This document shows, one piece after another, positions 4,915-51,673 of a stretch of DNA of 64,000 bases (within the stretch, counting starts at the first letter, position 1; the number at the start of each line of letters is the position of its first letter). Under the pieces are notes generated by a model that searched no databases, was not told the origin of the DNA, and saw only the letters and a list, made by a program, of their open reading frames with translations. The position numbers and the translations under genes were made by a program. Source of the DNA: Lepidodermella squamata (lineage: Eukaryota; Animalia; Gastrotricha); assembly GCA_047495785.1 (NCBI GenBank), contig JBLDXI010000029.1, positions 3,286,001-3,350,000 on the forward strand, read 5' to 3'.

Positions 4915-7900
4915 TCATCTGAATTTCAACCAATCAGGCAGTTCAAAGTCTGTTAAACCGAAATCCTGCTCCATCGTCAAGCCGCACTTTTTATGATGAA
5001 ACTGGCCACGGAATCGAAACCATTTGTTAGCCACCCATTTCTCGCCCCTGATCACCGGGCACCCGCCGTGAAGCGTCCGTTGGTCGATCGTCTCGTTGCG
5101 GTGAACATTGTACCAAATCAGGCCAGCATTCTTCGCCGCATCGATGCGAAATCCAAGCTTAGCAAACACCGTCCCACCGCCCTCTTCGACATGGTTCAAG
5201 TACAGCAGTAACGTCGCGATCCTATCGCCTAAATGCGACCCGGCAACTGAGGTTAGGTAGTCCCAATGCGGGGCGTAGTGGCCCCCGATCGGGTAGTACC
5301 CAACCTGATACATCTCACACCCGCCATCGCCGTCAAACGCGTTCATCCCGGTCACGGCCTCAATGTGTCTCGTTAATGAGGTCATTTTGCGCGTCACACT
5401 CGACTCGAGCCATGCGGTGCGCGCGCGCCGTTGGTGCGGCTCGAAATCCGACCCGCCCGTCTTGTAATTAACCACCCCAGCGTCGTTCATCTTCTCCGCA
5501 GCTTCGCTACGCAACAGCCCGGCTTGGTCGTCCGTCAATAGGTCGTAGACTATAACAGCTATCGGGTCCAGGTTCAGAATCTCCTCCTTAATCGGGCCTA
5601 GGATGAAGTACGGATGGTTGCCACGCCGGTTGTACCTGCAGTAAAGGTTCGGATTCCTCGATAGCTTTTCCGTATTTTCAGCACATGCGTCATATTGGCG
5701 AGTTTTCGCCAGTTCTTTCGCCGTTTCAATTTGCTTCTCGATCGGCAGCTTTTCGATTGAGTTGCCAAGGTCTTTTAGCAGCTTCGACACGCGTTCTTGT
5801 TCGTAGTAACGCCGGTTGTCTTCGAGGATTTTACGCGTTTCACCGCTGATTGATGACCGCGTGAGTTCGATTGTTACCATTTCAAGGGCTTCGGAGTAGT
5901 TTTTCATGTAACCAGCTGCGGCTTTTATGCCGTCTATTATCGATAGCTCCGTTATTCCATCAACTGCTGCAATGTACAAAAAAGATGAATTTAATTTCAG
6001 GTATTTTTGTGTTTTTTAAGGCTACAATATCGAGGGAATCAATGGAAAATTGAAAAAATCCAAGAATATTGAAATTTCGAGAAATGTGAACAATTCGACT
6101 TTTCAATTTCACATTACTTTTTTTTAAATTTTCTAAATTTTGCGAACAGCCTCAAATATTCCAATTAGGGTCATTACTTAGGATGAATCATCGAAACACT
6201 ATCAACAGGGTGCACTCGTAATTTTACGGGCTGACCATTGGTTTCAATAACCCGAAAATTAAGGTGCGGAAATCTGGCAGGGTCGATTTGTCTGAAACGA
6301 GGTTAAATAGATTTACCAGTTCAGCCGTGTGGACTAGTTCAACGGGAGTAGGGGGTCAAACTACTCCATGGATCAACTCTTGCGAAATACCCCGGAGAAA
6401 ATACTCAATAGTGAGAGAAATCTGAAAAAAGTGTCCATATAACGGGGACGATTTTAAATGAATTTATTTCAAGCGTGGGCCAACTGGTAATTATGAAGGA
6501 TTGAAAACTGCCATTTCTTAGGGCTTTTCAAAGATGCTGAACAAGATTCCATAAAAAAACCAGGATTCAAAATTTTTTGGGAGCAACTTGGTGATTCATC
6601 AAAAATTATGACCTAAAATAATTCATTTTTACAAATTTGTGAGACAAATAATTCGATAATTGGCCCATAAAGGCTGAAAAGTTCAGTAAATTCGAACCTC
6701 TAATTTCAATTTAAAATGTGTGTCAATTTAGTGCACCCCCTAAATGTTGGGTTCAAGCGCGAAATTTGAGAGACTACAGCATTAGATTTTACCAAAATAC
6801 TCTTCGCTTTTCGAGTTTCATTATAGAATCTATATTTTTCGTTATCTTGCCTGACTTAAAGATCTAGCCTTGATATTCCGCTACGAGTGTTCAGTTTACG
6901 TGTTTACAGGTTTGGCCTGCTGAGGCTTTATCGATCCCAAGTATTGATTTTACAAATCAGTAAATTTCCGATAAAAAAGGCTTGGAACATGACATCAATT
7001 ATTTTCCTACTTTACTTTTAAGACATTATTTATAGCCAAAACTATGAGAATTCCAAGACTTGGCAGGGGAGGGGGCATCAGTAGATCACGGATTGAAAAA
7101 CCCAAAATCGCTAAGGATTGGGAAAATTTGGGACGCGAAATAGGGTTGCAACCTCATTTTAAGTGTTGCAAATATTAGGGCAAGTTCGAATTTCTAAATT
7201 TGAGTTCAATTAAAAAATTATCGAATCAACCTTCGATTTCGTGAAATTAAAATTGAAAGTTCATAGTTAATCGTCGAAAATTCTCCTGAATTTGATAGTC
7301 ATTTTCCTTATTAGACCTAACTTTTAAATTTAAAATCTGGCTTAATCCTGAACAGAATAAATATTGGAAAAATCCGCAATTTCCATTTTTTCGAAAACAA
7401 AACTCTCTCTAGAATAATTCAAAAATTTTCAAATTTCAAATTTCTCAAATATTGAAAATAATTTTAAATTAAATTAAATTTGTTACCTTCGGCTTTAGAA
7501 TCGGCTTTAGTTGCATTGAACACCTTCCACGCCTTGTAGTAGTACGTCCGAGCCATCGAATAATTCATACTAATCGCAAAGCGATTCGCCAAGCTAAACA
7601 GCCCGCCAACTTCCGTCGGCTCAACATCGACAATAATCTCCTCAAACGCTCCAAAAGCCGCCGCCGCTTCATCCTTCTCCTCAACAGGCGGATCTTCAAT
7701 GCCACTCAGCTGATCGACGTACTCCGAGTAGGATTTAACGCTCAGGCCGAGGCGATTCCGATCTTCAGCCCGTAAATTCAGCCGAGCCAACATGTCCCGA
7801 ACTACGCTCAACGCCTCGTTATAACGGCGTATTTTATAGGCGCAGTAATGGTAGTAGTCCATGATTTGCAGCTCGCCAATTCCCGTATTTCCAGCCACAT

Positions 7901-8890: not shown

Positions 8891-9250
8891 GGCCGGGCGA
8901 CTTTTCAGCAGTGACATTTCAGCAATCCCATTCAGAGCGAGCAGCGACAATTCAACGGCGACATTTGAGCAGTGACAAATCAGCAGTGTCATTTGGGCAG
9001 TAATTGCACTATCAATTTGCAGAATCATATTTTATGGATGTGAGATTTTTTTTATTTATCTAGTTACTTTTCAGATGCGACATTTCATCAGAGGAATTCG
9101 GCTGATAATTTTCTTGCTATCAATATAAAATCGATTTATGTTAAGTAGCGATTGATGGAATCAGGTCAACTTTTTTCCCCTAAAATTGTTCATTCAAATT
9201 TGTTTGAATTTTCGCTTGCTCATTTGTCACTGCTATATTGTCACTTGTTA
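8891..9250. repeat. Truncated copy of the CAGTGAC-repeat TIR element family
   Basis: CGACTTTTCAGCAGTGACATTTCAGCAA matches the terminus of the 12824-13382 element; inverted TTGTCACTGCT motifs near 9220-9247. Confidence 0.6.
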
Positions 9251-9489: not shown

Positions 9490-9895
9490 TTTTATTTGTC
9501 TCGTCTCTCAAGCTCAAGAATTAGCTGCCGATTTGTTGATTTTCCAATATCTAAAAATTGATGCTGAGGAATTAATTATTCGCTATCCCTGGGGCTTTGA
9601 ATTGATTAAATTCTCATAAAAATAACGCAAAAATGATATTAATAAAATCACCATATTGCTGATCTTTAGCGCCATTATCACTTTCGCACGTTAGTGTTCC
9701 GCTTGATTGATTGTCACGGGTTCGATTTGGCCGGCTTCTATTATCGCCATTGTCCGCTAAAGAAACATTTTTTACGGAAAATAAGTCGAGCAATGTCTCA
9801 TCGTATTTGCATATTGGGGTATTTTCTGCCGAAGTAAAATAATTCTGAAAATTAATCAGCAGTAGCCAAAAAGTTGGCAAAAAATAAATTGTCAT
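9490..9895 (-). other. Putative secreted protein first exon or gene fragment, possibly a pseudogene
   Basis: ATG plus a signal-peptide-like MTIYFLPTFWLLLINFQNYFTSA and a GT donor near 9652, but the downstream frames stop quickly. Confidence 0.3.
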
Positions 9896-10284
9896 CTCGA
9901 AAAAAATTCAAAATTTTCCAAAAAAATTAAATTTTAATAAAATCGTGTTTTTCCAAGCGACACGCGATTATTGTTCATCTTTTACACACGAGCCGTGAAT
10001 TTTTTTGTCACACCTTGTAATCAGGAGTTCAACCCGGTTTCAGGTGAGGATTGGGATGAATAATTAAGAGTAAAAATCTTTGAAAAATGCGCCATACTGC
10101 TAGCTGCTGGCACCCGGAAATTAGGGTGGCGAGATGGCGCCCAAAGCAAACATTCCACCGTAATTTCAACTGAAAATTTTCTAGGACTCAAAATTTAAAA
10201 TTAAAGTTAACTGACTAGCCTGTAAAGCTTCTCGCCCTTAGCAATCTCTCGATTTCGATTTTAAATTTTATTGGAAGTAAAATC

Positions 10285-13200
10285 ATGGCAACAGAGGTGA
10301 GTAAAATCAATATTATCTCGATAACTGAGATTTTGCAGCTGATTTTCTAATTTTTTCCAGATTTTTACCGATGGCCTTATCGACAAGATTCACATGATCA
10401 ATTTTCGAAGACATTCAAACTGCGTCCTACCCGAATTATCGAACCATAAAATTGTTCAGATCACAGGCTCATCGGCTAGTAAGTTATCTACTACAGCAAC
10501 AATAATCGCGAAAAATATCAAAAATTTGGACAGCTTCAAATTGTATAAAATAAAAAATTATTTCTGGCTCAAAAATTCTCAAATTTAAAGCAAATATAAG
10601 TTGGGTGGTTGCTGATTTTTCTGAAATTTTTAATAATTGTTCTATATTTTTTTAAATATTTTTTGCTAATTTTGAACTCTCATAGGAAAATTGGAAAACT
10701 GAAAATTTGAAATTTTTGAAAACTTTAAAATTCATAATTTTTTCCAGCTGGGAAAAGTGCGATAATCGAGGCGGTTATGTTCGCGTTCGGTCGTCATTTC
10801 GACCACCCGGTTGACCTAATTAAAACCGGCAAAACATTCGCCGAGGTCGCCGTCACGCTGTGCAACACAACGCAACACTTGGGCGCATTCGAGCGTGAAA
10901 TATTCGGCGAGTCAATCACCATCCGGCGCCGCATCACCCGGCCACCGGCTAGCAACCACCCTGCGTCTATGCGTCAACCGACGTGCAATGTGCCTATCGC
11001 GATTGGCACGGAGGAGGATGAATTTTCGATTTGTAGCGCAAGTAAACTTGTAGTTTACAAGACTGAAACTGCGCTCAAGCGGGTGTTGCAATTTTTCAAA
11101 ATCGATATCGAAAATCCGCTGATGGCTATGACAAAGGAGCTGCTGTGGAATAAACTCAGCCCGAATGCTCATCACAACAGCAAGGGGCTGTATGAAATGT
11201 TTCTAGCTAGTATTGGCCTAGTTAACGCAACCGAAGAGGAAATGAAAAGGTAAATGAAATTCGTATAATTTTTTACTTTTTTCAACTTGAATGGTTGCTG
11301 TCTAAAATTTGAAATTTGAATTTTAAAATTTGAAATTCCAATTTGAAGTTAAAATTAAAACTAAAATTTTCAAATTTTGAGTTTTGAATTTTTGACTTTT
11401 TCAAATTTTTCAAAAATGTCCCTTTTTCTAAAATCTACAGTGAGAATAACTGAAAAAACTCGAAATTTCATAAATACTAAATTTCAATTTCAATTACTAA
11501 AGGTCTCCGCACAAACTCGGTATCTTTTTTTTTGCTTACGCATACGGCCAATTACTTACGCATACGACGAAAAACATACGACCACATACGGATCCTATTC
11601 ACAAACTCTGCATGCGTATGCGTTATGTTTTTGCTGAACGGCGTTGTCACCTAAAAAAGGCTTGCTTTGACCGGGGATCGAACCCGGGTGACTTGTTTGT
11701 GAGATCGGCATAACACCGATTACACTAACAAGACGCATGATTTTGAGTTGTAGTAATCAGTACTTGACGGATCACGCATCGTGATACAATTATTAATTAA
11801 TATAATTGGTAATTATTTATAGAGCACTTAAAATTTCTTATTTATTTATCCCAAATGACCCCAAAAGGTACAGGGAATTAAAAAAAATTCTTCTGAATTT
11901 TTATGATTTTTCCTGAATTTCCATCGAGTTTTTGATAATTATTCAATTAGTCATAATAATTAATATTTTCAACTTCAATGTTCGCAGAGTTGTGATGGTG
12001 GCACGATTAAAACCGGAGAAATTATCTCACTGTTTGCGTAAGTCGTTGTGGCGAGGTTGGTTATTGACTGGCCTCGACGATGGGAGGCTCGGGTTCGAAC
12101 CCCGCTCACCACACGACTTTTTTAAGCGATCAGGCCTCGTTGCAAAAATACATAACGCTTACGCATTCAGAGTTTGTGAATCGGTCGTATGTGATATGTT
12201 TTTCTTAAAACATGCGAGCGAGACAAACAACTTAACGCAAAACTTGTCTACTTATTTCATGCAGAGTTTGTGCGGAGACCTTAAACAATTCAAATTTAAA
12301 TAATTTTAAATGATTTCCAATAATTTTGAAAATTTGAAATTTTGAAATTCCTAATTAAAAAAAATATTTTAAGATATTCTAATTTTTTCACAGGCAAGAT
12401 TACGTTATTCTATGCAAAGCCGTTGAAATCGAGAAGAAATTCCGGTTAATGAACCCGACTCATCACATTCGTTTCGACCACGAAACCCGTGCTCTCTCAA
12501 TCGATGTTCACGCCTCGCCGAACGACAGTCTAGCTAACGATGAAGACCGGGTGCTTATCGGCATTTCACTCATGCTATCTCTGTGGCAACTGTCAGATTT
12601 GCCCGTTAAATTCGCCGATGATTTGGACGCATTTTTCGACGATGCCGGCGAGCGTGAGCGCGTTGTAGCGCTCATGGAACGAGTTCACGAGTACAGCACG
12701 GATTCTGGCCAGCTGTTTATCATCTCGAAAAAACGCGTCATTTCGCCACCAGTCGTAAGTTCAATCGAATATTCTCAACTTTTCAGTGGAAAAAAATTCA
12801 AAAATAGTCGAAGATGGAAAATGCGTGGTCAGACTTTTCAGCAGTGACACTTCAGCAAATGAGGGTCAAATCATCAGTGACTTTTCATCAGTGACACTTT
12901 GTCAGCAAAAAATTCATAAAAATCAAATATTAGTACTAATTTCACTAATCCTTGAAGACAAGTGAGCAGTGACATTGCAGCAGCGACAAAATATCAGTGA
13001 CTATTGAGCAGTGACTTTTCATCAGTGACAAATGAGCAAGTGACACTTCATCAACTTTTATTTATTAATCTTGAGCACTGAACTTGCACTTTTTGAGCTC
13101 AACTTCAATGTAGCGCATAGTCCCCCTGCTTAATGAGGCTAGAATTCTCCTGATGAAATGTCTCCGCTGAAATGTCACTGCGCAAATGTCATTGAGATAA

Positions 13201-13687
13201 AAATAATAAATTTGAGAAAATATAGGAAAAATTAAAAAAAATCTCTGCTGACTTGTCACTGATGATTTGTCACTGCGCAAATGTCGCAGCTCAAATGTCA
13301 CTGCTCATTTGTCACTGATGAAAAGTCACTGATGATTTGACCCTCATTTGCTGAAATGTCACTGCTGAAAAGTCGTACAACCGGAAAATGTTTATTAGTT
13401 TAAAATTTTTTCTCAATTTTGTATTTTTTGTATGATTTTTCGAAAAACTAAGAATATATCATTATTTTCATAAATAATTCAAAAATTGATCAACAAAGTA
13501 AGAAAATTCAGCAAAAAAAGTTTTATCGATTTTTCGAATTTTCTCAATTTTTCTTATGAATATTCTAATATTTTTGAATAATTGCATTATTTCTCAATAG
13601 TGTCGCGATCATCAAGTGATGATTTTGGAGCTTCGAAGTGGCCGATACAATAATTCCGAGCGCAAGGGAGCCGCAATTGAAGCCTGA
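10285..13687 (+). CDS. Head-only SMC6-like ABC-ATPase-fold protein, ~359 aa; exons 10285-10296, 10361-10478, 10748-11249, 12394-12754, 13601-13687
   Basis: N-head GLIDKIHMINFRRH, Walker A GSSATGKS across an intron, SMC6-like FGESITIRRRI and FKIDIENP. C-head FDHETRALSIDV, LMLSLWQL, Walker-B/D-loop-like VKFADDLDAFFD, QLFIIS. All four introns are GT-AG and keep the frame open. Confidence 0.8.
11664..11734 (-). pseudogene. tRNA-Val(CAC)-like pseudo-tRNA / Pol III module inside the MITE arm
   Basis: GTCTTGTTAGTGTAATCGGTGTTATGCCGATCTCACAAACAAGTCACCCGGGTTCGATCCCCGGTCAAAGC: A-box, CTCACAA loop, perfect T-arm CCGGG-TTCGATC-CCCGG, then a T6 run. The anticodon stem does not pair. Confidence 0.6.
12042..12112 (+). 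pseudogene. tRNA-like Pol III module in the opposite MITE arm
   Basis: A-box TGGCGAGGTTGG, B-box GGTTCGAACCC, T-run shortly downstream; no intact cloverleaf. Confidence 0.5.
12824..13382. mobile_element. Merlin-like (8-bp TSD) TIR element with internal CAGTGAC repeats (intron 4 of the SMC6-like gene)
   Basis: 8-bp TSD GGAAAATG (12816-12823, 13383-13390); ~70-bp near-perfect TIR GACTTTTCAGCAGTGACA..TCAGCAAATGAGGGTCAAATCATCAGTGAC; right end CC. Superfamily assignment is inference. Confidence 0.8.
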
Positions 13688-13907
13688 AAGTTGAAGCTCG
13701 CAATCCTAATTAATGAGGCAATAAAAAAACTTTTTTTCATTTTGTTCTCATCTCCGCAGCCTCATCCTCATTGGCTCATTTTTATTATTATTACCTCAAT
13801 TACAATTGTTTGTTGCTTTTATTCGGAATTATTTGGAATAAAATCACATTTGAGCGATAAAATGGAAATTTTCTGATATTTTTCCCGGTCTCTCAAGATT
13901 AAAAAAG

Positions 13908-14337
13908 TGCGTACCCTAAATTTAGGGTTCCAGCACTAAATTTGAGACATCAGCACTAGATCCCCCTAAATAGGGTTTCTCGAGTTTCTAGGCTTCACTA
14001 GAATCTCAAATTTTTCTTTATCGTGCCTAACCTTCATATTACGCGTATTTCGCGCTATGATCGGCTAGTTTACTAATTATGCTTCATCGTATAGAGCCGA
14101 TATCGATTCTAAGTATCGATTTTACTAATCACTGATTTTCCCGATATCAGCCGTCTTGGAACACAAGATCGATGGTTTTTCTACGTAGCTTAGGGCACCA
14201 TGAAGCTAAAATAGAAAATCCTAGGTTCAGGTTCGGTATCGAACCAAAAACGAAAGCGCCGAAATCGCAAAGAATGTGAAAAATTGATGGACAGGACGCT
14301 TAAATTTAGTGCTGGAACCTCATTTTTAGTGGTACAG
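13908..14337. mobile_element. Dispersed ~430-bp MITE family (other copies or fragments at 6731-7170, ~8680-8830, ~14980-15210, ~30480-30670)
   Basis: TIR-like GGTTCCAGCACTAAATTT/AAATTTAGTGCTGGAACC; shared internal motif ATCGATTTTACTAATCACTGATTTTCCCGATATC found in the other copies. Confidence 0.7.
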
Positions 14338-37765: not shown

Positions 37766-39313
37766 TTAATCAGGGTCTGAGGATTGCCTTCTGCGTTTCC
37801 TCCTCAAGTAATTTTCGAATAGATCAAGCTTATTGTCGATCATATTGTTAAATGTTTCCCGAATTTCAGATTTGTACTCCGCATTTGGAGCTGGAAACCT
37901 CGGCTTATCGCCTTCGAAAAGGCGAAAATGAGCAATAACGCCCTCCGTATACGGGTCAAGATGCCGGACCATTCCTCCCTCGATCAACTTATGAATAGAG
38001 GCGACAATCACGTTGTCAGATCTCAAAATCATTTTCTCTCGAGAATGAACCATTGCCACAACATCAACCGTGTAGTGGTCTCGAATTGTATGCTTAACCG
38101 AGTATGGGCCAATCCTGGCGTCCGTTGAATTCGGAGTCGGCATGTGAGTCATTGTCCAGAACGCTATTCCTCCGATGAAAGGATCCGCCTTAATAGCAGA
38201 CTCCAGTAAATCTATCAGGCTCACTCCATTGAAAACTTGTAAGAATTCATCGGTATCCATCGAAGCAACCCAGGTTGATTTTTCCCTCAAGAAATAGAAG
38301 CATTCGGTCATTGCCGATGTTTGAAAGTGGTGTGGCGTGAATTGGAGATGAAAATCAAAAGGGACTAATGAAAGAATTCCCATCTCGAGATAATACTGCA
38401 AATAGTCGAAAAAAGCGTGGAAATCTGGGTCGTTGATGTAGATAACAAAATGTTCGATTCCCAGCATAAGATGGTACTCAATCCACTCTGGGACTCGATC
38501 TAAATGATTTTTATTGAGAGAAGTGCAAGCGGAGAGTTTGACTTTTCGGTTGAGTCTCATAGGCTCCGGGCAAATCTTTGTATTAACAGCCATTGTCCGG
38601 CTTATTTTTCTTGTTCTCGCTACGCTGGAGGGTCCAAAAAGCTTCAACACATTCGGCTTTGCTAGGATGTAAATTCTACTCTTAGAAGTGATCCTAAATG
38701 ATTTAGTATCGACCGGGCAATGAAGAATCACATTGTTATGGGAGCTCTCGTATTCCGGTGTTGGTGATTTAGAAACGCAGTGAATGAAATGACCGCTATC
38801 GATAACAATGCTCCAATCGTACTTGTAAGCCCACAGTTCGTATCCAATGAGGTTGTAATGCGAAATTCCATCAACGAGCAGTGGCGTGAGCAAGAGTGTG
38901 ATTTGCACGTACTCGTCTGTTAAATAGGCACCAGTTAGTAACGGATACTTAAGGGAAGCGATTTCTCTCAGCGTTCGAACTGCGTAAAATTCAGCCTGTT
39001 GAAGGCATGAACATTCAGCACCGAGAGACAGATTAAGACGGTCGTAATTTCGGCCCAAATATTCGCATTTTGATAAAACGGCGTCAGGAATTTCCAGAGT
39101 CGGCAAAGGTTCGCTGTAGTATAGGTGTGGGTTGTATCGAACAAAATAAAGTATCGCGAGTATCAATTGAGGGCATATTTTCGGTAGTAATCTCACATTT
39201 AGGATATTGCGCAACATAATGTGTGCAAAATCGCATTGTTTATTAGTTCCTTTGTAGTCTAAATTTGTGGCTTGGCTCGAATCATTTGTAGATACAGGAT
39301 TGGTGGGTTTCAT
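37766..39313 (-). CDS. Glycosyltransferase family 92 (DUF23)-like, intronless (start may be 39217)
   Basis: LSACT, EWIEYHLMLGIEHFVIY, ECFY, WVASMDTDEFL (DxD), IAHFR; N-terminal hydrophobic anchor. Confidence 0.8.
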   Translation of the reverse strand: MKPTNPVSTNDSSQATNLDYKGTNKQCDFAHIMLRNILNVRLLPKICPQLILAILYFVRYNPHLYYSEPLPTLEIPDAVLSKCEYLGRNYDRLNLSLGAECSCLQQAEFYAVRTLREIASLKYPLLTGAYLTDEYVQITLLLTPLLVDGISHYNLIGYELWAYKYDWSIVIDSGHFIHCVSKSPTPEYESSHNNVILHCPVDTKSFRITSKSRIYILAKPNVLKLFGPSSVARTRKISRTMAVNTKICPEPMRLNRKVKLSACTSLNKNHLDRVPEWIEYHLMLGIEHFVIYINDPDFHAFFDYLQYYLEMGILSLVPFDFHLQFTPHHFQTSAMTECFYFLREKSTWVASMDTDEFLQVFNGVSLIDLLESAIKADPFIGGIAFWTMTHMPTPNSTDARIGPYSVKHTIRDHYTVDVVAMVHSREKMILRSDNVIVASIHKLIEGGMVRHLDPYTEGVIAHFRLFEGDKPRFPAPNAEYKSEIRETFNNMIDNKLDLFENYLRRKRRRQSSDPD

Positions 39314-39662
39314 GCGCTGACCTTTGGCCTGAAAGAGTTGCAAGGCGCGAAATATAATAACCCTCGTCTGGCGAGAAACGTTGAAGACAATTTGAGGACA
39401 TGCGTGCTGATTTCAATTGCTTACCCGTAAGCCTTACTTTAAGGATGCTCGAAAAAAATGAGATTAGGAACATCAAAATATCGATGATCAACCTATCAAG
39501 TCGAATCTTAGTTTATTTGATCTAACGAAAACAAAAATTCGATGAAATAAACGTGAGACCATGACAAGGTTTTGTCTTTATTGCATCAGTATCTTTCGCT
39601 TTATCCTTCATCACAAGTTTCATCTCTAAGTCTATGGATTTCTATTTGTCGTTCAAAATGAC

Positions 39663-40749
39663 TCAGTCATCGTTTTTGTTACTTTTGATCCGATTTCGAT
39701 TGACGTAGCCAGCAATAGTCAAATACTGCAGCTGGTCGTGCCTTCTGTACCAGTTCTCGCCGTAGTACTTCCGAAATCCCTTATCATGCAACTTCGTGAT
39801 CAATCCATGCCCATATTTCTCCACCCTGTCCAGAATGCCTTTGAACGGATAATTGCTCACAACGTGCCATTCCATAACTAGATGGCTGACCCGTTCCATA
39901 ACGCCATCATCAAACGCCCTAGTCAAAGATACCCATTCATCTCTCTCAATGTCGACTTTGAGTACGGTGATGTAGGTATGGTTGAACTTTCGCATGATTT
40001 CAGCCAACGTTTTTGTGTTCTCCTTACGATTCCCCGAAATTTCACCAGTTAAACCGATTTCATAGAATTTAACGCCACTCGGACGAACTGGTTCATCGTG
40101 AATGCTCATGTCAAAGGTGAAAACCGAACATCCACGCGCTGCCATTTCATCGTCAAACGAATATTCCCAATGAGATCTAAATGTAGAAACATAGATAGAT
40201 CAATATTTCGGCGAGAAGAAATTAATACCCGAATGAATAGACAATGCATGGTTCATGTTCTGGGAAATTGTCCATACAAACTCGGTAGGTTTTGTGGGCA
40301 TTCTCTTCGTCTTGCCCAAATGGCTGTAGCTTGCTACATTTGACCTCCTCCGGAGCTCCTACTCTTCTAAAACCAAGGAGTTACTCAATGGCGATATTTT
40401 CAACAAAAACTCACTTTACTAGGGCGAAAAAGCGCTCGAGGTAATATGTTGCATCTGAATGTGGATTGACATTCGTATGAAAGTCGCACGTGTCGTAACT
40501 AAAGAGAAATCGAAATGGTTCGCGAATATTGCGAGGTCAAAGTCTATACCAATTAGGAGATCTAGTTGGCGCGGGCGTTTGTTGCGTTTCGATCGCTTTC
40601 GCCGGTTCACATTTCGGGCAACTCGAGCTTAAAATGAAGATTTGAGTGATGAAAATGAGGAAGAGAAGGCTGCATATCACAATGGTATTTATGTGGCTTA
40701 ACCGTGTCAATGACACAAAAATGGAAGGGACTAAAATGCTACCTGACAT
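39663..40749 (-). CDS. METTL24/FkbM-like type II membrane methyltransferase, copy 4
   Basis: TM IVICSLLFLIFITQIFIL; CIVYSFG, VLKVDIERDEW, LVMEWH; exon 2 is homologous to copy 1 (C.DTCD...NP.S...YLER.F). Confidence 0.8.
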
Positions 40750-41146
40750 GCTTGGTCGATTTGAGGTATGATAAGAAAGCTTTGTTTAGTTTCCTTTCAT
40801 GAGTTGTAGACGCGTCTAACGATCTTGTGGGATTAGCTTCCATTTAAAGGTAAATTATTCTCTGAATAACTTTTGTCCACGAAAGTGCTTCTGTAAATAA
40901 ATGAAAATTGGCAATATTTGAGCCTGCTTAAATATTGAGAGGGAAAATTTCGAAACATTTTAAGGGGGATTTATTTATTTCTTATTAATCATATATCAAT
41001 GGCCCTCCTCGAAGCTAAGGTTAGTTCCCGCGCTTAAACAGCAAACCGATCCTTATAGCCTATTAGCCCAACTAATATTATGCTATCATTATATAGGGTC
41101 ATTTCTTAAAATGGAATGGGTGATGTAGGATTAACATTTATATCAA

Positions 41147-42237
41147 ATGAAAAGGCAATGGGGCATAGTTTCATCCTGGATTCTCACGGGTAAAGACTGT
41201 TCACTGACCATTAATTACGAAATAAAGAAAAAATTGTTTTCCAGGTCTAGCAGCTTATTTGCTTTCCCAAAATGCAACGGAGAAATTGCTCAAGCCAGGT
41301 TTGTAACATTTAATCACTCTGAATCTGTTAAATTCAGCCAAATGTAAATTTAGAAACCGTGGAAGATCCGTTGAATTTGCCATTTATCATAACTGTAATC
41401 TCATCGAGATGCCAATTCGAAAAGCGCCAAGCGATTCGAGAAACATGGGGCGATCGCAGGATGTTAGCTAGAATGCTTGGAAATCAAACGTACGGGCCTT
41501 ACTTCATCATCGGACAACCGGATATTAAAAAATTCAATGATTCAATAGTTGACGAATGTCAAACAAGAATAGAGAAAGAAGTGACTATCTACGGCGACTT
41601 AGTGACCATTTCTGCCCTAGATGTTTACAGCCTGCTAACCCCGAAAGTGTTCGAAACCTTCCTTTGGGCTCGGCATAAGCTCAGTTTAACCCATTCATCT
41701 GGGGATAAACATAGTACTTTCTACTTGGTCAAGACTGATGACGATGCTTACATCAATTTGTTGGCTATAGCTCGGCAATTCTATCATTCGATGAAGGAAC
41801 ATAGCAAGAGATCGATTTTAGACAAAAACCTCTACTGCGTTGCAAATACTGGAGCTATAGTTGTTCGAGCCAAAGACTCAAAGTATTATACATCTCGAGA
41901 AAGCTACGCCCCCGATTGGTATCCACCGTTTTGCTCCGGGATCGGTTACATTTTCCAAGTTGGCTTGCTAGATTTGATGATACCGAAAATCCGGGCGAGA
42001 ATGGCGAATTATGTGCAGAACGAAGATGCTTTCTTCACCGGCATCATAGCTGAGGAGCTGAAGCTGAGGCACTTGAATTTCGAGTTCACAGATTCTTGCG
42101 GACCGCATGGCTCCGGATGGACGCAGGAGTCGCTTTGCCCAAACGCGAGTCGAAACGCGGTCGTTCACCGTTTGGAGCCACGCGATATGCGGATGTTGCA
42201 TAAGTGCCCGGATATGCAACGCTTCTATCGTTATTGA
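41147..42237 (+). CDS. GT31 beta-1,3-galactosyltransferase-like 1 (two short 5' exons, main exon 41354-42237)
   Basis: Spliced anchor MKRQWGIVSSWILTGLAAYLL; RQAIRETWG, LTPKV, YLVKTDDDAYI, YPPFCSGIGY, EDAFFTG. Confidence 0.85.
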
Positions 42238-43036
42238 AGATGAGCCGTGCTGTGAAAAGTTCGAATAAAAAGCGATAGATTTTTACATTTATTTGTTGTG
42301 GAACTCTCAGAGAGAAAAATAGCTGAATGTGGAAGGTAACATTTTTGTGGGAAAATGCTGTCTGCCACCCCCTTAGACCATGAAAAACTGGTTGTTGACA
42401 TGCGACATGCAAGGATATGGCTTCTTTAAAGCTCAGGGTAGCCCTAAACAGAAATGTGACTGGAACGTGATTAAAACTATGATCGCACCCTGGGAGTCGC
42501 AGACGAGTGAAGATGAGTAAATCGAGTACGACGAGTTCGTATATAGGTTATAGGTATATAAACGATTTACCTACTAGTGCAGTATCAAAAATAGCGAATT
42601 GGCACAAGTTCATCCTACTATTATTTTTATTCCGTCAATTTTACCTGCCTAAACTAACCTGTAAACACTAGCTTGCCGTGAACTCGTTTCATATAAAAAC
42701 ATACCGGACATACCGAGCTAATAATTTACACACGTGTAGGAGGTTATTGATAATCGTCTCCATGATTTTTTCCCATTTGGCTTTGTAGCTTCCAGCCATA
42801 CATAAAAACCTATGAGCCATGAAAACCTCAATTTTTGACCATTTTACTCAAAATGACGGTAACTATTCATTAGACGCCAAATTTAACTTTGGGCAAACAA
42901 TTCGGCCTCAAATGTTTGCTGAGGCTAGCGTTGCTGCTGAGATACCGATCCTTTACATTGTTTTTGACTGAATAACAAGCTTAAAATAACAGAATTCTTA
43001 CTGTGCTGCAGTCATAAGTAATGGATGTATTATTGT

Positions 43037-44083
43037 CAGTGTGGTATACGGTTATAACCACGGTTTTAACTAGCCGGTTATAACCGAGTTTTAACCGGTC
43101 ATTTCAAAATTGATTTTAACCAACTGTCGTTTAAACTCCCTAAATCCCAGCTGATTTTGATTTGAAAATTTGAATTTGAATTTTGAATTTCGATCGCCAT
43201 GTTGATCGGCTTATAAATCCAGCATATTACATGGCTGATTTCAACCCCAGCTGTGGACCCCACCTTGGGGACGAAAATATTAATGAGGAAGAAGTGCCAG
43301 TTTGCTCGCGATGGTCTTCTCGCAGCTGATCTCGCACCAGGTTCCGTTGACTTACTGAGAGCCAAATGCCCCAGTATTAAGGTGGTCTCGCAGCTGGTGT
43401 TGACATAGGAGCCTTGTTTCTAGCTCAATCACACATCATACATGACTGGTCATTTCTCAAGGTATTTACACAATAATTAACCTCTTAGTCTGTAGGTATT
43501 TACTCGAAAATCAAAAGTCGAAAATTTGCCTAACCTTCTGGGGCTTAGCGACAGTAAATAACGGCGGGTGTGACCTGCAACCTGCAACTCCTGCTTAACC
43601 TCGCAGCAAATAATCCCATCTAATCCTATTTAATTTCAATGCGCCATTAAATCACTGAGCTAAAGAATTATCTCGACTTTAGACCTCATCTTGAAGAACA
43701 GGCTGTCGCTAGCAACTGTCAATAATTGTTTGTTTACCAAGGATTTATGCGAGGCGAGCAGCGTTCGTTGAGCGCGAACGTAAAAAGCAAATAAACAGCT
43801 CTTTTCAAAATGTAGGTGGAAGAAACACCTATCACCTATCATAATAATTTTCGAAGGGGACCTTGAACTGAAAACATTGCTATCGAGGAAATTGATGTAT
43901 TGTTGGCCCTAGAATTTGAGTAAACTAATAAGTGAGTCTTCTAGTGTAAATTATGAATAAAAACAACTCTTTTCGATAACTTTTGATCGGGTTTAGTAAA
44001 AACTGGTTGAAACCGCGGTTTTAACTGAGTTAAAACCAAAAGTTGGTTAATTCCGAATTAACTTAGGTCAATATACCACACTG
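43037..44083. mobile_element. hAT-type non-autonomous element
   Basis: TIR CAGTGTGGTATA/TATACCACACTG, 8-bp TSD ATTATTGT, subterminal GGTT(T)TAAC repeats. The TIR is related to that of the 2052 element. Confidence 0.9.
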
Positions 44084-44297
44084 ATTATTGTATTTTATAT
44101 GTCGATTTCTTTTCTTTTTCCTAAATGCCGGTGAGCTATATATTTCTTTCATTTTTTATTTATTTAAAAAACACTGAAAACAGCTATTTTTAACTATCTG
44201 CTGCTCGAGTATTCGCCATTTGGGGCACTTCAAAAAAGTAACTCCTCAAAATTCCAAAGGTTATCAATTTGTTTAAGAAATGTTAAAGTTTCTCTAG

Positions 44298-45118
44298 TCT
44301 GGACTAATGGCGACGTTAATGTACCCCTCATCATCACCGTAATTTCTTCACGAAGCAATTTCGAGAAGAGGCAAGCTGTGAGAGAGACATGGGGCAACCG
44401 AACTTATCTCACATCAAATCTCGGCTCTCAAATTCTTGGACCGTTTTTCGTGGTAGGAAAATCGGAGAAAGATGACGGTTGCCAAGATCGATTGGACGCT
44501 GAAATCGCGGCTCATGGCGATTTGATAGTCGTGCCTGCTTTGGATACCTATCGCATGCTTACCCCCAAGGTATTAGAAGCCTTCCGCTGGGTACAGGGCT
44601 TAGCGAATGTGCGAAAGTACTACCTGGTTAAGACGGATGATGATGCTTATGTCAATTTAGTCGCGATAGCTCGAACTTACCATCGAGTGATGAAGATTAG
44701 AAACCGAAGGCTGGACAAATCATTCTATTGCTACGTAGTTTCCGGGGCCCCTGTCATTCGAGCTAAAGATTCAATTTACTACGTCACACCAGAGAGCTAT
44801 GTTCCAGATCGGTATCCCGACTTCTGCTCCGGTATTGGGTACATCTTTCAAGTTGGCCTTCTAGACCTAATGATGCCAGGAATCATGGCTAGAATGGAGC
44901 ATTTTGTACCAAATGAAGACGCGTTCTATACCGGGATAGTTGTGCAAGACCTGAAGGTACGGCATTATTCCGTGAAAAATGCCGTTGTCCTTGGTACATC
45001 GTGGACTGATGAAGGACTATGTGGCGATGCAGCTAGAATGGATCTTGTTCATCGGCTGCAGGCACGTGAAATGCGCCGATTACATTCGTGCTCACTAGCT
45101 ATTAGAGCTAAGTCTTGA
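44298..45118 (+). CDS. GT31 beta-1,3-galactosyltransferase-like 2 (main exon; small 5' exons probably ~44125-44259)
   Basis: RQAVRETWG, YLVKTDDDAYV, YPDFCSGIGY, EDAFYTG. Confidence 0.8.
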
Positions 45119-45442
45119 ATTGTATGAAACTGAGAATTTCTAAAAAAATAAAGTCACTAAAAGCGAGACCATTAGCGAGTTCTTTTTCGCCATTGGTGTC
45201 ATTTTCGTACTACATCAGACATCAGCCAAAATCACAAATTCCCTCACTCGCCAAGATATAAAATGATGGGATCCAATGAGATGATCATCCAAGTAAGGAC
45301 CTAACTATGCCTAAATCGCGAAAAAATGGGAATGTTCAGAAGTCATCGTTAGACCGGTTAGACCGCTTGAATTCAGCTCTGGAACCTCAAGTTTTCCCCT
45401 CAAAATTGTGCGGAAAATTTGAAACATATATAATATATAAAA

Positions 45443-45857
45443 CAGAGCTTTGGATTTGATTTGATTTGATTTCCGGCTTAAATCATGGACCTCCTTCAAT
45501 CAATCAAAATCAATCATTGTCCCAATTTTCCAGGACTAAATCAATCAAATCAAATCATCGAAACCCATAAATCGCAATAAATCGCGAAACATCGGAGTTT
45601 TCAGGAAGCTAGGGGCTTCGAAATGTCAAGAACTGAATGAAATAACGCGAATTTGAAATCACCATCTCTTTTTAAAGTAAATTAGCATAAAAAAATAGGA
45701 GAGATCTTAGTTTCGCGGTATCAAGTTTTTGGATTGCATCACCAAGGCCAAATCAAAAGCAATCAAATCAAAATGCTTCCCCGCGTAAATCAATCATTTC
45801 AAATCGAAATCAATGAAAATAGGGTCTAAATCAAATCAAATCAAATCCAAAGCACTG
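45443..45857. mobile_element. hAT-type MITE with (AATCA)n subterminal repeats
   Basis: TIR CAG(A/T)GCTTTGGATTTGATTTG, 8-bp TSD ATATAAAA on both sides. Confidence 0.9.
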
Positions 45858-46147
45858 ATATAAAACTGTTTTCTCATAGAATTTAGTTCGCATGGTCAGC
45901 ATAGAAATTTTTTATCCATATTAGCTGCTTACTATACAACAAACTATGTAGGGATTGACCATATAGTTTTTGCACGCGTGTATTTTGATGCAAGCTTTAA
46001 AAGCTTGATGCTACGCCTAATTACAAACAAAATAAAATAATAAACAGCCGAAAGAAATGCCCAAGCGGCATACAATTTTTCAAGTTGAGAAAGGAAAGGA
46101 GACGTCCAGACTAATTTTAGATGCTCGCCCTACCAAACTCAACAGGA

Positions 46148-47199
46148 TGGCGTTACTTCTTATTTTTCGCAGGTATGTCACCAGGCAAATTTCTCAATTT
46201 TTTCCAGCTTCATCTAGACTAAATCTATACAGTTTCCTTAGTAAACGTGAAAGTGCCTAAAATGGCCATTGTTCCAGTTTTGGAATCAGGTATCACTAAC
46301 ACACCCAACCCAATTTTCGCTGAATTACATAATTTTCAGCAATCGGTTTTCGCTACGATGATGATAATATTGGGGATATGAAATTCATTATCACTGTCAT
46401 TTCGAGGCTATGCAACTTTGACAAGCGTCAAGCTATCAGAGAAACGTGGGGGAACCAAACGATGCTGAGGTCAAAACTTGGCCCCCAAATCTTTGGACCT
46501 TTCTTCATCATTGGTACTTTTGATTCTAATCAAAGGAACGTATCAAGTAATCAGGACTGCATGGGTCGATTGAGCGCTGAAATCGAAACACATCAGGACG
46601 TTTTTCAAGTATCAGCCATCGAGAAATATCGTCAACTTACGCTGAAGGTTTTCGAGTCCTTTAAATGGGTGCGGCGCCACCTTAATTTGACGAATCTCGA
46701 AAACGGTTACCTGGTGAAAACGGACGACGATGTTTATGTTGATTTGGTCGCTGTTTCCCGAGCTCACTATCGATCAATGGTGTCGCGTAGCGATAAGGTG
46801 GACAGTTCTTTCTATTGCTTCGTCCATTCTGGGGCTCCAGTTATTCGCGATCCTACGTCAAAACACTACGTCTCAAAGGAGAATTACGCCCCTGACTGGT
46901 ATCCGAAATTTTGCTCAGGAATCTGTTACATCTTCCAAGTCAGCCTTCTCGATCTCATGATACCAGAAATTAATAGGAATATGAACAATTCAGACCCGAA
47001 TGAAGACGCTTTCTTTACAGGGATCATCGCGGAGCGTCTCAAGTTACGACACAGATCGATTAAAAGCGCAGTCCCCTTTGCTTTCCCGGCTGAAGAGGAT
47101 AAAGTCTGTCAAAAGGGCAGGAACAAATTGCTGGCTCACCCCTTGGGACCCCGTGAAATGCTAACACTTCATAAATGTCGCGAAAATAAAACTTTTTAA
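46148..47199 (+). CDS. GT31 beta-1,3-galactosyltransferase-like 3 (5' exons uncertain, main exon ~46340-47199)
   Basis: RQAIRETWG, LTLKV, YLVKTDDDVYV, YPKFCSGICY, EDAFFTG. Confidence 0.8.
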
Positions 47200-47201
47200 T
47201 T

Positions 47202-48503
47202 TTATTCTGAAATTAAAGTGATGGGATTAGATTTCATTTTGAAGTTGTTTAGTCTCTGGCTTAGAATCGGGTCGAATCTCATCGCGAAGGTCTCGTCCTT
47301 CTCAGGGATAGGGGTTAGTCCTCCGATCGTTAGCCTATCGAAGAAAATCGTCCTGATTTGATTGTAAGGATCCGCATGATTTTCCCCGAGTTTCAGCTCA
47401 GTTTGCGTTACGTAAGATACATTAGGAGTTCGGACTATTACGTCGCTGATTTGATAGTCAAACGTTGGGTGCTTGTTCCTCCAAGTCCAGTTTAAAACTC
47501 GGCTGTAACCGAGGGTCCTCACTAAATCAGGCTTCGCCGTAGTATTCAAGCTGGAAAATCGCCATGGGTGCACCATTAAGCCGCCGATCAGAGGTTGTGT
47601 GACTACCTTTCGAATTGCCTCTACCATATGCTTCCCGTATGGATCCATGAATCGGTCTGTTGAATGAAATGAAACATAAACAGCTCGCGGTTTGAATCGG
47701 TATAAACAGTCGTTCATTGCACTGCTATCTAGGAAGTATTGATCAACCGCTCGAAAATTCCACGGAATCAAAGTTAAAATTTTCTCATCCAAATATGGCT
47801 TTAAAAAGGACGAAAGCTCTTTAAAGTCTTCATGTGAGACGTAGATAATGAAATGTTCGAAATCGGTCAATCTGTGATATTCAATCCACTCGGGTATTGT
47901 AATAAATTTCCGCCTATCAGTTACAAAGGAGCAACTCGTTAGTGAGAAATTACGAGGCGCGGAATTGAGCTCATTTGAATTAAGGCAGACGTTTTCGTAA
48001 GTTTGTATAATCGAATGTTTCGAAATAGCACGGATGTCTATTTTTTGCCCAGGGTATAAAACGCGGTTTAAATTATCCGAGATGTCAAATTTTAGTATCA
48101 GGGTGTCTAAATGGGTATTTGGCAACTTGCCAACCGCCTTGAAATCGAACCGAATTCCATCAACCGAGCCTCGCCATTTCGAATCCGCCCACCACTTTCG
48201 GTAATTCCAGTAGGTAAATTGCCAGTTTGAAAGTTTCTTCGACGCGAAAATTGCGTATAAAACAGGGTGGCCTTTCCTTGTCGAACGGAATACGCTTAGG
48301 AGATACGGCGCGTTGTTATCTCCAGTAGGAGGCGGGAGATCGGCAATTGAGTTCCTGCTACAGCTTGTCAGGCCAGTTTTTGATTGATTTCGAAATTCCC
48401 TCCTTTCCAGCCATCGTATTATCGGGGCCCATGTTAGATTCGCAGATATCAGTAACAGCACACCTGCTACAATTCTAGCACTTAGAATTCGTTTTTTATT
48501 CAT
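47202..48503 (-). CDS. Divergent GT92-like protein with a degenerate DxD motif, intronless
   Basis: Type II anchor; LTSCS, PEWIEYHRLTDFEHFIIY, AMNDCLYR. The DxDE position reads STDR. Confidence 0.75.
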   Translation of the reverse strand: MNKKRILSARIVAGVLLLISANLTWAPIIRWLERREFRNQSKTGLTSCSRNSIADLPPPTGDNNAPYLLSVFRSTRKGHPVLYAIFASKKLSNWQFTYWNYRKWWADSKWRGSVDGIRFDFKAVGKLPNTHLDTLILKFDISDNLNRVLYPGQKIDIRAISKHSIIQTYENVCLNSNELNSAPRNFSLTSCSFVTDRRKFITIPEWIEYHRLTDFEHFIIYVSHEDFKELSSFLKPYLDEKILTLIPWNFRAVDQYFLDSSAMNDCLYRFKPRAVYVSFHSTDRFMDPYGKHMVEAIRKVVTQPLIGGLMVHPWRFSSLNTTAKPDLVRTLGYSRVLNWTWRNKHPTFDYQISDVIVRTPNVSYVTQTELKLGENHADPYNQIRTIFFDRLTIGGLTPIPEKDETFAMRFDPILSQRLNNFKMKSNPITLISE

Positions 48504-48646
48504 TTTACCTTTAAAATCTTAACTTGATTCCGGCTTTGCGTTACCAAGCCTCCAATTCAAGATTTCTGATTTTGAGAGATGAAGCCAATCCCACGAAGTT
48601 TGGAATAGTCTTGAAATGAGAGGTAAAGTGTCACTGGGGGCCCGAA

Positions 48647-50982: not shown

Positions 50983-51673
50983 CCAATAGACTTTTTTACT
51001 GACATTGAACAACAGGAGCACTAGAAATTAATAAAATGACGACCCAGAATCTTATTTTCTCTGCGACTTTCCCCGCTTGAAGAAGTATCAGAGGCATCCA
51101 TTTGTAAGCAAGTGAGCTTATCTGATACTGATTCTCACTATATAGAAAATTCAGGCGATTTCCTAACAAGAATCCCCTATGGCTGGAACGGCTCAAAAAA
51201 GTCAGAACTTTTGGGCAGCATTTTGTCAGAATTCGCCTCAAAACACCCCAGACCTTAGGTAACACATTTTCTTGACAATCTAAGGCGAGCCACAAGAACA
51301 TCGAAAATCTCAATTTTACTTTGGGGTTTCAGATCGAAATTACACATCTCTGCGGCTCCTAAATTCCTAAATTTCCTAAACAATCTTCAAAAATGCATCT
51401 CCATTGTGACCCACTTTTAAGGCTTTCTCACGTCGGGTCGTAAGTTTGTACTAGAAAGCTTGCCAGAGTGACAAGGCAATCCTATTTATCACCGTGAAAG
51501 CTTTTAAAGTTTGTGCATTGTTTAATTCGCCCAATCTACGCGTAATAAAAAAAATAGCTTACGCTTCCCTGCGTCTAGACAAGCCATCTGAGAAAGCATG
51601 GTAATTTGGATTATCCATCGCTTCCAACAATGCTGTCAAGGAATAAGCATATATCCCCCTTAACATTCGAACC

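What the first reader, a model, noticed from the sequence alone, without database searches (positions are those of the whole stretch)
10285..13687. Mini-SMC6: N- and C-terminal ATPase head halves fused directly, with no coiled coils or hinge
Seen: the spliced ORF (~359 aa) goes from the N-head (Walker A GSSATGKS ... YEMFLASIGL) through a linker of about 30 aa straight into the C-head (FDHETRALSIDV...). The intervening 1.1-kb intron is mostly a 781-bp MITE plus AT-rich DNA, so the roughly 700 missing residues cannot be hidden there. The ABC signature LSGGE is replaced by LANDED and the Walker B catalytic Glu by Asp (ADDLD versus LDEFD). The frame stays open across 5 exons, which suggests selection. 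Inference: a catalytically impaired head-only paralog that could act as a decoy or regulator of SMC5/6 (kleisin binding, or bait for viral SMC5/6 antagonists).
Basis: partly seen in the sequence, partly recalled or inferred. Interest (0 to 1): 0.75.

Follow-up and report, generated by a model that had tools for sequence, protein, structure and literature searches.

The report
Head-only, catalytically degenerate SMC6 paralogue
A small invertebrate carries an intact, transcribed and selectively maintained gene for just the ATPase "head" of the chromosome-repair protein SMC6, with the long arms, the hinge and most catalytic residues gone. It probably modulates the SMC5/6 machinery instead of being one of its ring subunits.

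Summary
A five-exon gene (10285-13687, + strand, 359 aa, all introns GT..AG) joins an SMC6-type N-head directly to an SMC6-type C-head through a linker of about 30 residues.

- **Not an artefact.** A 40%-identical relative in environmental metagenome scaffolds (L001) encodes everything from the Walker A lysine to the stop codon in one continuous exon. A DNA contig of run X2 crosses intron 3 without the 784-bp transposon.
- **SMC6 descent.** Both halves hit only SMC6 in the PDB. The N-head nests inside a clade of full-length SMC6 proteins and shares a rare loop insertion with two of them. The relative's model matches SMC6 heads (TM 0.76).
- **Motifs.** Walker A and the Walker B and D-loop aspartates are kept. 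The arginine-finger loop, the Q-loop Gln, the signature Ser-Gly-Gly and the catalytic Glu (now Asp) are lost, and both family members share these losses.
- **Selection and expression.** All 13 listed exonic differences from a second DNA form are synonymous, and all 12 listed indels are non-coding. cDNA-like contigs (X1) lie on exons but not on unique intron sequence.

Function is inferred only. The closest precedent is the SMC4-derived SMCL-1 of Caenorhabditis. The scan found this kind of gene before on another piece of this genome (s1-422013), which may be the other haplotype of this locus.

The parts
10285..10296 (+). Exon 1 (ATG + 3 codons, MATE)
   Evidence: First in-frame ATG after a stop at 10216-10218, with a GT donor at 10297. 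The start aligns with the start MSEE of the relative in L001.
10361..10478 (+). Exon 2: first beta-strands of the N-head and the start of Walker A (..ITGSSA)
   Evidence: Translation. It is 43% identical to L001 5622-5726, E 1e-8. It ends in phase 1 in the codon before GK, which is the same place and phase as the only intron of the L001 gene.
10748..11249 (+). Exon 3: remainder of the N-head (GKS of Walker A, Q-loop region, start of the neck helix)
   Evidence: PDB best hit is human SMC6 residues 108-199. It is 33% identical to the full-length SMC6 P0002, E 2e-7 against 1.8 billion proteins, and 46% identical to L001, E 3e-38. X1 contigs lie on it.
10466..10758 (+). Walker A GSSATGKS (10466-10478 plus 10748-10758, split by intron 2)
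   Evidence: Fits GxxxxGK[ST]. The relative has GLPLCGKT.
11128..11139 (+). Q-loop position: MTKE, where SMC6 has LTQE (Gln -> Lys)
   Evidence: HMMER alignment to human SMC6 and alignment A2. The relative has MTHP.
11250..12393 (+). Intron 3, at the N-head/C-head junction
   Evidence: GT..AG. The relative has no intron at this position.
11498..12281 (.). Polymorphic 784-bp TIR element (MITE) inside intron 3, with a 4-bp TAAA duplication
   Evidence: Inverted arms. An X2 DNA contig joins 11497 to 12282, which is the empty site. Flanks were read.
12394..12754 (+). Exon 4: return neck helix and C-head (signature, Walker B, D-loop, H-loop regions)
   Evidence: PDB best hit is human SMC6 residues 958-1029. 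Pfam SMC_N E 0.007. It is 38% identical to L001, E 7e-19.
12530..12547 (+). Degenerate signature site LANDED, where SMC6 has LSGGE
   Evidence: A2 alignment. The relative has a deletion here.
12611..12628 (+). Walker B/D-loop FADDLD (SMC6: ILDEVD/LDEFD): Walker B Asp and D-loop Asp kept, catalytic Glu -> Asp
   Evidence: The relative has the matching PVKFADDID.
12825..13381 (.). Second TIR element inside intron 4 (72-nt arms, 94% complementary; internal 14-bp GTCACTG periodicity; high copy number)
   Evidence: X2 word depth is up to about 10,000 here against about 60-100 on unique sequence.
13601..13687 (+). Exon 5: C-terminal tail ending GAAIEA plus stop
   Evidence: The last six residues are identical in the relative. 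X1 depth here is 16.
13688..13860 (+). 3' UTR with an AATAAA at 13837-13842
   Evidence: X1 contigs cover 13692-13804. AATAAA sites are listed. The end of the UTR is inferred.

Best explanation
This is a real, expressed gene of a small family of SMC6-derived, head-only proteins.

**Origin.** An ancestral full-length SMC6 gene of this animal lineage was duplicated, and the copy lost the roughly 700 residues of coiled-coil arm and hinge.

**Structure.** What remains folds as a complete SMC6-type ABC head. A two-helix stub stands in place of the arm.

**Catalytic state.**
- Kept: the P-loop, so it probably still binds nucleotide, and the Walker B and D-loop aspartates.
- Lost: the arginine-finger loop, the Q-loop glutamine, the signature Ser-Gly-Gly and the catalytic glutamate. 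It should therefore be unable to hydrolyse ATP or to form a canonical two-ATP engaged head dimer.

**Inferred mechanism.** It acts as a non-catalytic mimic of the SMC6 head. It would occupy a partner of that head, such as the SMC5 head, the Nse4 kleisin or an Nse5/6-like loader. In doing so it would tune, most likely restrain, SMC5/6 activity. This is the same logic as the 'poison head' proposed for SMCL-1 and condensin.

**Shown here:** gene structure, homology, architecture, motif states, purifying selection and transcription. **Inferred only:** nucleotide binding, binding partners and the direction of any regulation.
For: **Gene model and frame:**

**Homology to SMC6, for both halves independently.** Human SMC6 is the top PDB hit for exon 3 and for exon 4, at the correct N-head and C-head positions. 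The relative's continuous exon hits only SMC6, E 8e-8. Exon 3 finds the full-length SMC6 P0002. P0002 was itself confirmed as SMC6, E 6e-124 against SMC6 versus 2e-15 against SMC5.

**Architecture is real and old.** The L001 gene has two exons. N-head end, linker, C-head and tail lie in one open frame, and its single intron has the same position and phase as window intron 2.

**Single origin within SMC6.**
- The two head-only proteins form a clade (100/100) nested in a starred clade with P0002, P0009, P0010, P0011 and P0012.
- One N-head loop is 36-45 residues long in the head-only proteins and 45-46 in P0002/P0009. It is 21-25 residues in 29 other SMC6 proteins.

**Fold.** AF2 model of the relative: pLDDT 73.8, pTM 0.72, with a helix hairpin at residues 130-164. 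The best PDB matches are yeast Smc6 head chains. The best Atlas matches are SMC6 clusters, TM 0.76, 256 residues at 2.8 A.

**Motif states** are shared by both members.

**Selection.** 13 of 13 listed exonic substitutions are synonymous. All 12 listed indels are in introns or the UTR.

**Transcription.** X1 contigs cover exons 2-5 and the 3' UTR. Depth is zero in all seven bins of unique upstream or intron sequence. One X1 loose end is the reverse complement of the SMART cDNA primer, which I recognise from my own knowledge.

**Precedent for the mechanism:** SMCL-1 (PMC5373644). For the partners of the SMC6 head and neck: PMC10954462.
Against: - No binding, ATPase or genetic data exist.
- No junction-spanning RNA contig was shown, and X1 is only guessed to be RNA by the tool.
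- The variant table was truncated (108 rows not shown). Differences in exon 2 are unknown, so the synonymous-only result is not complete.
- The neck stub is short, about 15-20 residues per helix. The Nse4 N-terminal site on the SMC6 neck may be largely gone.
- The C-head is so diverged that its tree position is unresolved.
- I could not show that this genome also has a full-length SMC6.
- The stems are long (2.45 and 4.77 changes per site). That fits relaxed constraint or a new function unrelated to SMC5/6.
Confidence: 0.6

Rival explanations
1. The protein has a new function independent of SMC5/6. The head-only protein would be a nucleotide-binding scaffold or DNA-binding factor that no longer touches SMC5/6 partners, comparable in spirit to short-armed SMC-like ATPases such as RecF.
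For: Stems are very long in both trees. The neck is short. Family-specific motifs absent from SMC6 are conserved, for example FAFGRH, VYKTETALKR and the identical C-terminal GAAIEA.
Against: Without a signature motif, an ATP-driven homodimer of the RecF type is unlikely. The overall head shape still matches SMC6 best.
Confidence: 0.22
2. It is a decoy or bait for virus- or transposon-encoded antagonists of SMC5/6. The head would be kept only as a target mimic and would evolve fast in an arms race.
For: Divergence between the two family members is fast, 40% identity. SMC5/6 is a known restriction factor targeted by viral proteins (PMC10954462). An earlier scan note reports a transposon carrying a kleisin gene in this genome (s1-431961, unchecked).
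Against: There is no sign of positive selection between the two DNA forms, where all differences are synonymous. Nothing related was found in viral contigs. No antagonist is known in this lineage.
Confidence: 0.1
3. It is a decaying remnant: a partial duplicate of SMC6 on its way to becoming a pseudogene.
For: Catalytic motifs are lost, and two transposon insertions lie within the locus.
Against: Frames are open in two members that are only 40% identical. The degenerate motifs are shared rather than randomly decayed. Differences are synonymous-only and indels are confined to non-coding DNA. Both transposons sit in introns. X1 coverage is limited to exons.
Confidence: 0.05
4. It is an assembly or gene-model artefact. 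The arm and hinge exons would be collapsed, deleted or hidden in intron 3.
For: None was found beyond the unusual architecture itself.
Against: An independent DNA contig spans intron 3 without the MITE. The window contains no N. Three independent metagenome assemblies encode the same junction in one exon.
Confidence: 0.02

Closest known systems
SMCL-1 of Caenorhabditis elegans (Chao et al. 2017, PMC5373644)
   Same: It consists of N- and C-terminal SMC head halves with no hinge or coiled coil. Walker A is kept, while the signature motif and the Walker B catalytic Glu are lost. It is a lineage-restricted duplicate of a canonical SMC gene, and it is proposed to be a 'poison head' negative regulator.
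   Different: SMCL-1 resembles SMC-4 and binds condensin subunits. This family derives from SMC6, so it is an analogue that arose independently, not a homologue at the paralogue level. It also lacks the Q-loop Gln and the arginine-finger loop. No interaction data exist for it.
Canonical SMC6 (SMC5/6 complex subunit; e.g. human 9lwi_A, yeast 8hqs_B)
   Same: It shares the head fold and detectable sequence homology of both head halves. The Walker A, Walker B Asp and D-loop Asp positions are conserved. It also shares a lineage-specific loop insertion with the full-length SMC6 proteins P0002 and P0009.
   Different: About 700 residues of arm and hinge are absent, and the signature, Q-loop, catalytic Glu and arginine-finger loop are lost. 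It therefore cannot be a ring-forming, ATP-hydrolysing subunit.
Engineered SMC head constructs used in structural biology (N-head, short linker, C-head)
   Same: The topology is the same: two head halves joined through a short coiled-coil stub. Several such constructs are among the fold matches.
   Different: Those constructs are artificial and catalytically competent unless mutated. This one is natural, conserved and degenerate.

Membership tests
SMC6 (canonical subunit of SMC5/6) | N- and C-terminal ABC head halves homologous to SMC6 rather than to other SMCs | tested here: met
   SMC6 is the only or best PDB sequence hit for each half and for the relative. The N-head nests within SMC6 and shares a loop insertion with SMC6 proteins. 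The best fold matches are SMC6.
SMC6 (canonical subunit of SMC5/6) | Long antiparallel coiled-coil arm | tested here: not met
   Aligned with 31 full-length SMC6 proteins, the head-only proteins show a gap of about 700-850 columns between the neck-helix start and the C-head. The model shows only a helix hairpin of about 14 plus 18 residues.
SMC6 (canonical subunit of SMC5/6) | Hinge dimerisation domain | tested here: not met
   No residues correspond to the hinge. There is no coding capacity in intron 3. The homologue is continuous across the junction.
SMC6 (canonical subunit of SMC5/6) | Intact ATPase motifs (Walker A, Q-loop Gln, signature LSGGE, Walker B hhhhDE, D-loop) | tested here: not met
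   Walker A, the Walker B Asp and the D-loop Asp are present. The Q-loop Gln is Lys, the signature SGG is NDE, the catalytic Glu is Asp, and the loop carrying the RG of the arginine finger is deleted.
SMC6 (canonical subunit of SMC5/6) | Heterodimer with SMC5 and binding of Nse4 at the neck | not testable with these tools
   This needs co-folding or biochemistry. A joined protein of the window could not be handed to the fold tool.
SMCL-1-like head-only SMC regulators | SMC head halves without hinge or coiled coil | tested here: met
SMCL-1-like head-only SMC regulators | Walker A kept, with the signature motif and Walker B catalytic Glu lost | tested here: met
   compared with the description in PMC5373644.
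SMCL-1-like head-only SMC regulators | Common descent with SMCL-1 (SMC-4-like, Caenorhabditis) | tested here: not met
   All sequence, tree and fold evidence points to SMC6. SMCL-1 itself was not aligned here because no sequence of it was in hand.
SMCL-1-like head-only SMC regulators | Binds SMC subunits and negatively regulates the complex | not testable with these tools
   This requires pull-downs and genetics.
RecF/RecN/Rad50-type short SMC-like ATPases | Closer in sequence or fold to these than to SMC6 | tested here: not met
   NCBIfam Rad50 and SMC hits are marginal. In fold searches RecN and Rad50 rank below SMC6.

The most novel reading that the evidence does not exclude
Animals have evolved 'poison-head' regulators of SMC complexes at least twice, independently. 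One is SMCL-1, derived from SMC4, in Caenorhabditis. The other would be this SMC6-derived family in another invertebrate lineage. If so, this would be the first natural head-only modulator of SMC5/6. It would be a ready-made tool for dissecting how head engagement and the neck gate control that complex.
Probability: 0.35. Interest if true: 0.8.

Novelty: new variant of a known kind. Interest (0 to 1): 0.66.

Why it matters
SMC5/6 is the least understood eukaryotic SMC complex, and no dedicated protein inhibitor built from one of its own heads is described in the papers I could search.

A conserved natural head-only SMC6 would show that trimming an SMC down to a dead head is a recurrent evolutionary route to regulating SMC machines. 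It would also give a compact, testable reagent. Expressing it should tell whether it titrates SMC5, Nse4 or the loader.

It is also a clean example of domain loss. The arm and hinge were removed precisely at the head boundaries, and selection continued on what was left.

Tried and rejected
- **Word search with exon 3:** nothing. This search cannot see proteins longer than 290 aa, so the blank is uninformative.
- **Word search with P0001:** it found only itself.
- **Pfam and NCBIfam on single exons:** only sub-threshold SMC_N, Rad50 and SMC hits.
- **Exon 2 alone against the PDB:** noise.
- **Rfam and tRNA scans of the locus:** nothing.
- **Other copies in the window:** none.
- **Related loci:** JGI metagenome contigs and viral contigs returned no relative. 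One call failed for lack of a conserved stretch.
- **First mixed alignment of head fragments (A1):** it misaligned the C-heads and was discarded in favour of A2.
- **C-head tree:** it could not place the family because of long branches.
- **L001 versus L005 alleles:** too similar to say anything about selection. There are three differences, one of them non-synonymous.
- **Shared repeats:** none between the window and any fetched locus, so I could not tell whether L001 or the full-length SMC6 contigs come from the window's species.
- **P0005:** a repeat protein and a chance hit.
- **Bacterial promoter and terminator scan:** irrelevant for this eukaryotic gene.
Full report
**How the searches were done.** Those were run exon by exon, by reference. 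Local scripts concatenated the exons for three purposes only. These were to check the frame and splice sites, to classify variants, and to run one local tblastn against three fetched loci. The tblastn was then repeated exon by exon. The structure model is therefore of the relative's continuous exon (L001:5800-6666), not of the window's spliced protein.

**Observation.**
- Reading 9800-14200 and translating the pieces gives a five-exon gene on the + strand: 10285-10296, 10361-10478, 10748-11249, 12394-12754 and 13601-13687.
- All four introns are GT..AG with pyrimidine-rich acceptors. The joined length is 1080 nt, with a single stop at the end, giving 359 aa.
- Exon GC is 0.49 against 0.40 for the window.
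- An in-frame stop lies 69 nt upstream of the ATG.
- The protein runs from an SMC-type N-head (Walker A GSSATGKS, split by intron 2) to ...YEMFLASIGL.

**No hidden arm or hinge.**
- Intron 3 is 1144 bp. Positions 11498-12281 are a 784-bp element with terminal inverted repeats and a TAAA duplication. The rest is AT-rich simple sequence.
- In DNA run X2, one contig joins 11497 directly to 12282. This is the empty site, so the insertion is polymorphic.
- Intron 4 holds a second, high-copy TIR element at 12825-13381.
- The big protein search with exon 3 found P0001, a 222-aa ORF product from environmental metagenome assemblies. Its contigs are L001-L003 and L005.
- Those contigs carry a two-exon gene, 5607-5736 plus 5798-6669, of 333 aa. 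Everything from the GK of Walker A through the end of the N-head, the linker, the C-head and a tail ending GAAIEA is one continuous open frame.
- Exon-wise tblastn of the window peptides against L001 gives 43% (E 1e-8), 46% (E 3e-38) and 38% (E 7e-19). The hits are collinear and in one frame.
- The only intron of that gene has the same position and phase as window intron 2.
- The head-to-head fusion is therefore a property of the gene family, not of this assembly or of my splice model. The alignment across each of my splice junctions also supports the model.

**Descent from SMC6.**
- Each half of the window protein, searched alone against all PDB sequences, has human SMC6 as its top hit. Exon 3 matches residues 108-199 (E 0.037) and exon 4 matches residues 958-1029 (E 0.02). 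Each hit is weak on its own. Together they are two independent searches that pick the same protein at the right positions.
- The relative's continuous exon hits SMC6 alone, at E 8e-8.
- Exon 3 also finds P0002 (1144 aa) at E 2e-7 against 1.8 billion proteins. P0002 is a genuine SMC6: E 6e-124 to human SMC6 against 2e-15 to SMC5, and its relatives are named SMC6 in many animals.
- In an N-head tree of 33 rows, the two head-only proteins form a clade (100/100) on a stem of 2.45 changes per site. That clade nests in a starred clade (96/90) with the unnamed full-length SMC6 proteins P0002, P0009, P0010, P0011 and P0012.
- A rare character agrees with the tree. One N-head loop is 21-25 residues long in 29 SMC6 proteins. 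It is 45-46 residues in P0002 and P0009, 45 in the window protein and 36 in the L001 protein.
- The C-head tree again unites the two head-only proteins (100/97), but it cannot place them because the stem is 4.77 changes per site.

**Fold.**
- AlphaFold2 on L001:5800-6666, using alignment A2, gives pLDDT 73.8 and pTM 0.72. The model is a complete head with a helix hairpin (residues 130-143 and 147-164) where the arm would leave.
- The best Foldseek matches in the PDB are 8hqs_B, 8t8e_A and 8i4w_B, all from Smc5/6 structures (E 8e-9 to 3e-8). 8hqs_B and 8i4w_B are yeast Smc6 head chains. They rank ahead of Smc5, prokaryotic SMC, Rad50, cohesin and condensin heads (chain identities).
- In the ESM Atlas the two best matches are SMC6 clusters, with TM 0.76 and 256 residues at 2.8 A.

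**Catalytic motifs (alignment A2).**

| Motif | Window protein | L001 relative | Canonical SMC6 |
|---|---|---|---|
| Walker A | GSSATGKS (kept) | GLPLCGKT (kept) | GxxxxGK[ST] |
| Walker B Asp and D-loop Asp | kept, within PVKFADDLD | kept, within PVKFADDID | present |
| Arginine-finger loop (carries RG) | deleted | deleted | present |
| Q-loop Gln | Lys | His | Gln |
| Signature Ser-Gly-Gly | SLANDED | deletion | SLSGGE |
| Catalytic Glu | Asp | Asp | Glu |

The same losses are kept in proteins that are only 40% identical. This points to a stable, non-catalytic state, not to ongoing decay.

**Selection.**
- Run X2 holds a second DNA form of the locus. The 13 exonic differences listed all fall on third codon positions, and all are synonymous.
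- For 10786-11105, which lies wholly inside exon 3, the contig has exactly five differences. All five are listed, so that stretch is complete.
- Non-coding pieces differ by 3-7% and carry all 12 listed indels.
- Caveat: the table was truncated (108 rows not shown), and differences in exon 2 are unknown.

**Expression.**
- Run X2 is DNA.
- Run X1, which the tool only guesses to be RNA, has low-depth contigs on exons 2, 3, 4 and 5, on the 3' UTR and on the repeats.
- Its depth is zero in all seven bins that contain only unique upstream or intron sequence.
- One X1 loose end is the reverse complement of the SMART cDNA primer. I recognise this from my own knowledge, and it fits a cDNA library.
- No junction-spanning contig was shown, so splicing itself is supported by homology, not by reads.

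**Mechanism (inferred).** A head that probably still binds nucleotide, but cannot hydrolyse it or present a signature motif, and that has only a stub of neck, cannot be a ring subunit. The most economical reading is a mimic of the SMC6 head. It would occupy the SMC5 head, Nse4, Nse1/3 or an Nse5/6-like loader, all of which contact the SMC6 head or neck (PMC10954462). In doing so it would modulate SMC5/6. The only described parallel I found is SMCL-1 (PMC5373644; literature searches). SMCL-1 is SMC4-like, binds condensin SMC subunits and acts negatively. The present family would be an independent, SMC6-derived analogue. Independent neofunctionalisation and a decoy role cannot be excluded. A pseudogene or an artefact is unlikely.

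**Context.**
- The neighbouring genes are unrelated: a 2OG-Fe(II) oxygenase and an array of GT92 glycosyltransferases.
- The scan noted the same kind of gene on another piece of this genome (s1-422013). That finding is 2050 letters long. This gene minus its two transposons is 3403 - 784 - 557 = 2062 letters. It may therefore be the other haplotype of this locus and not a second paralogue. I could not test this.
- I also could not establish whether L001 is an orthologue in another species or a paralogue, or whether this genome has a full-length SMC6.

**Verdict.** The structural reading is supported. The function is open. This is a new variant of a known kind (head-only SMC regulators), with interest of about 0.66.

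Noticed in passing
window 11498-12281: The intron-3 MITE is polymorphic: an empty site is present in run X2. Its sub-terminal arms contain tRNA-like T-arm strings (GGTTCGAACCC-type). ARAGORN and Rfam call nothing there.
   Followed up: partly
window 12825-13381 and 8898-9001: The second TIR element has a 14-bp internal periodicity around GTCACTG and a very high copy number. X2 word depth is up to about 10,000 against 60-100 on unique DNA. A related fragment lies at 8898-9001.
   Followed up: partly
window 13869-14300: A very abundant repeat lies just downstream of the gene. X2 depth is about 45,000 and X1 depth about 86 at 14016-14162, with many alternative joints.
   Followed up: no
window 37766-56706: There is an array of at least four GT92-family glycosyltransferase genes plus a galactosyltransferase, mostly as long single exons.
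   Followed up: no
window 13667-13687 and L001 6649-6666: The two head-only proteins end in the identical hexapeptide GAAIEA, although the tails before it differ. Full-length SMC6 proteins end differently. It may be a C-terminal motif of unknown meaning.
   Followed up: no
L006 10001-13441; L007 10001-13360: Full-length SMC6 genes of the related metagenome animals are single intron-free ORFs in compact, gene-dense scaffolds. The L001 head-only gene has one intron and the window gene has four. Intron number therefore differs sharply within the family.
   Followed up: partly
L001 7264-7671: A reverse-transcriptase ORF lies about 600 bp downstream of the relative's head-only gene, and Cys-loop receptor genes lie upstream. 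There is no synteny with the window.
   Followed up: no
run X1, loose end at window 13667: The 25-nt unmatched end equals the reverse complement of the SMART cDNA PCR primer, which I recognise from my own knowledge. This implies that X1 is a cDNA library.
   Followed up: partly
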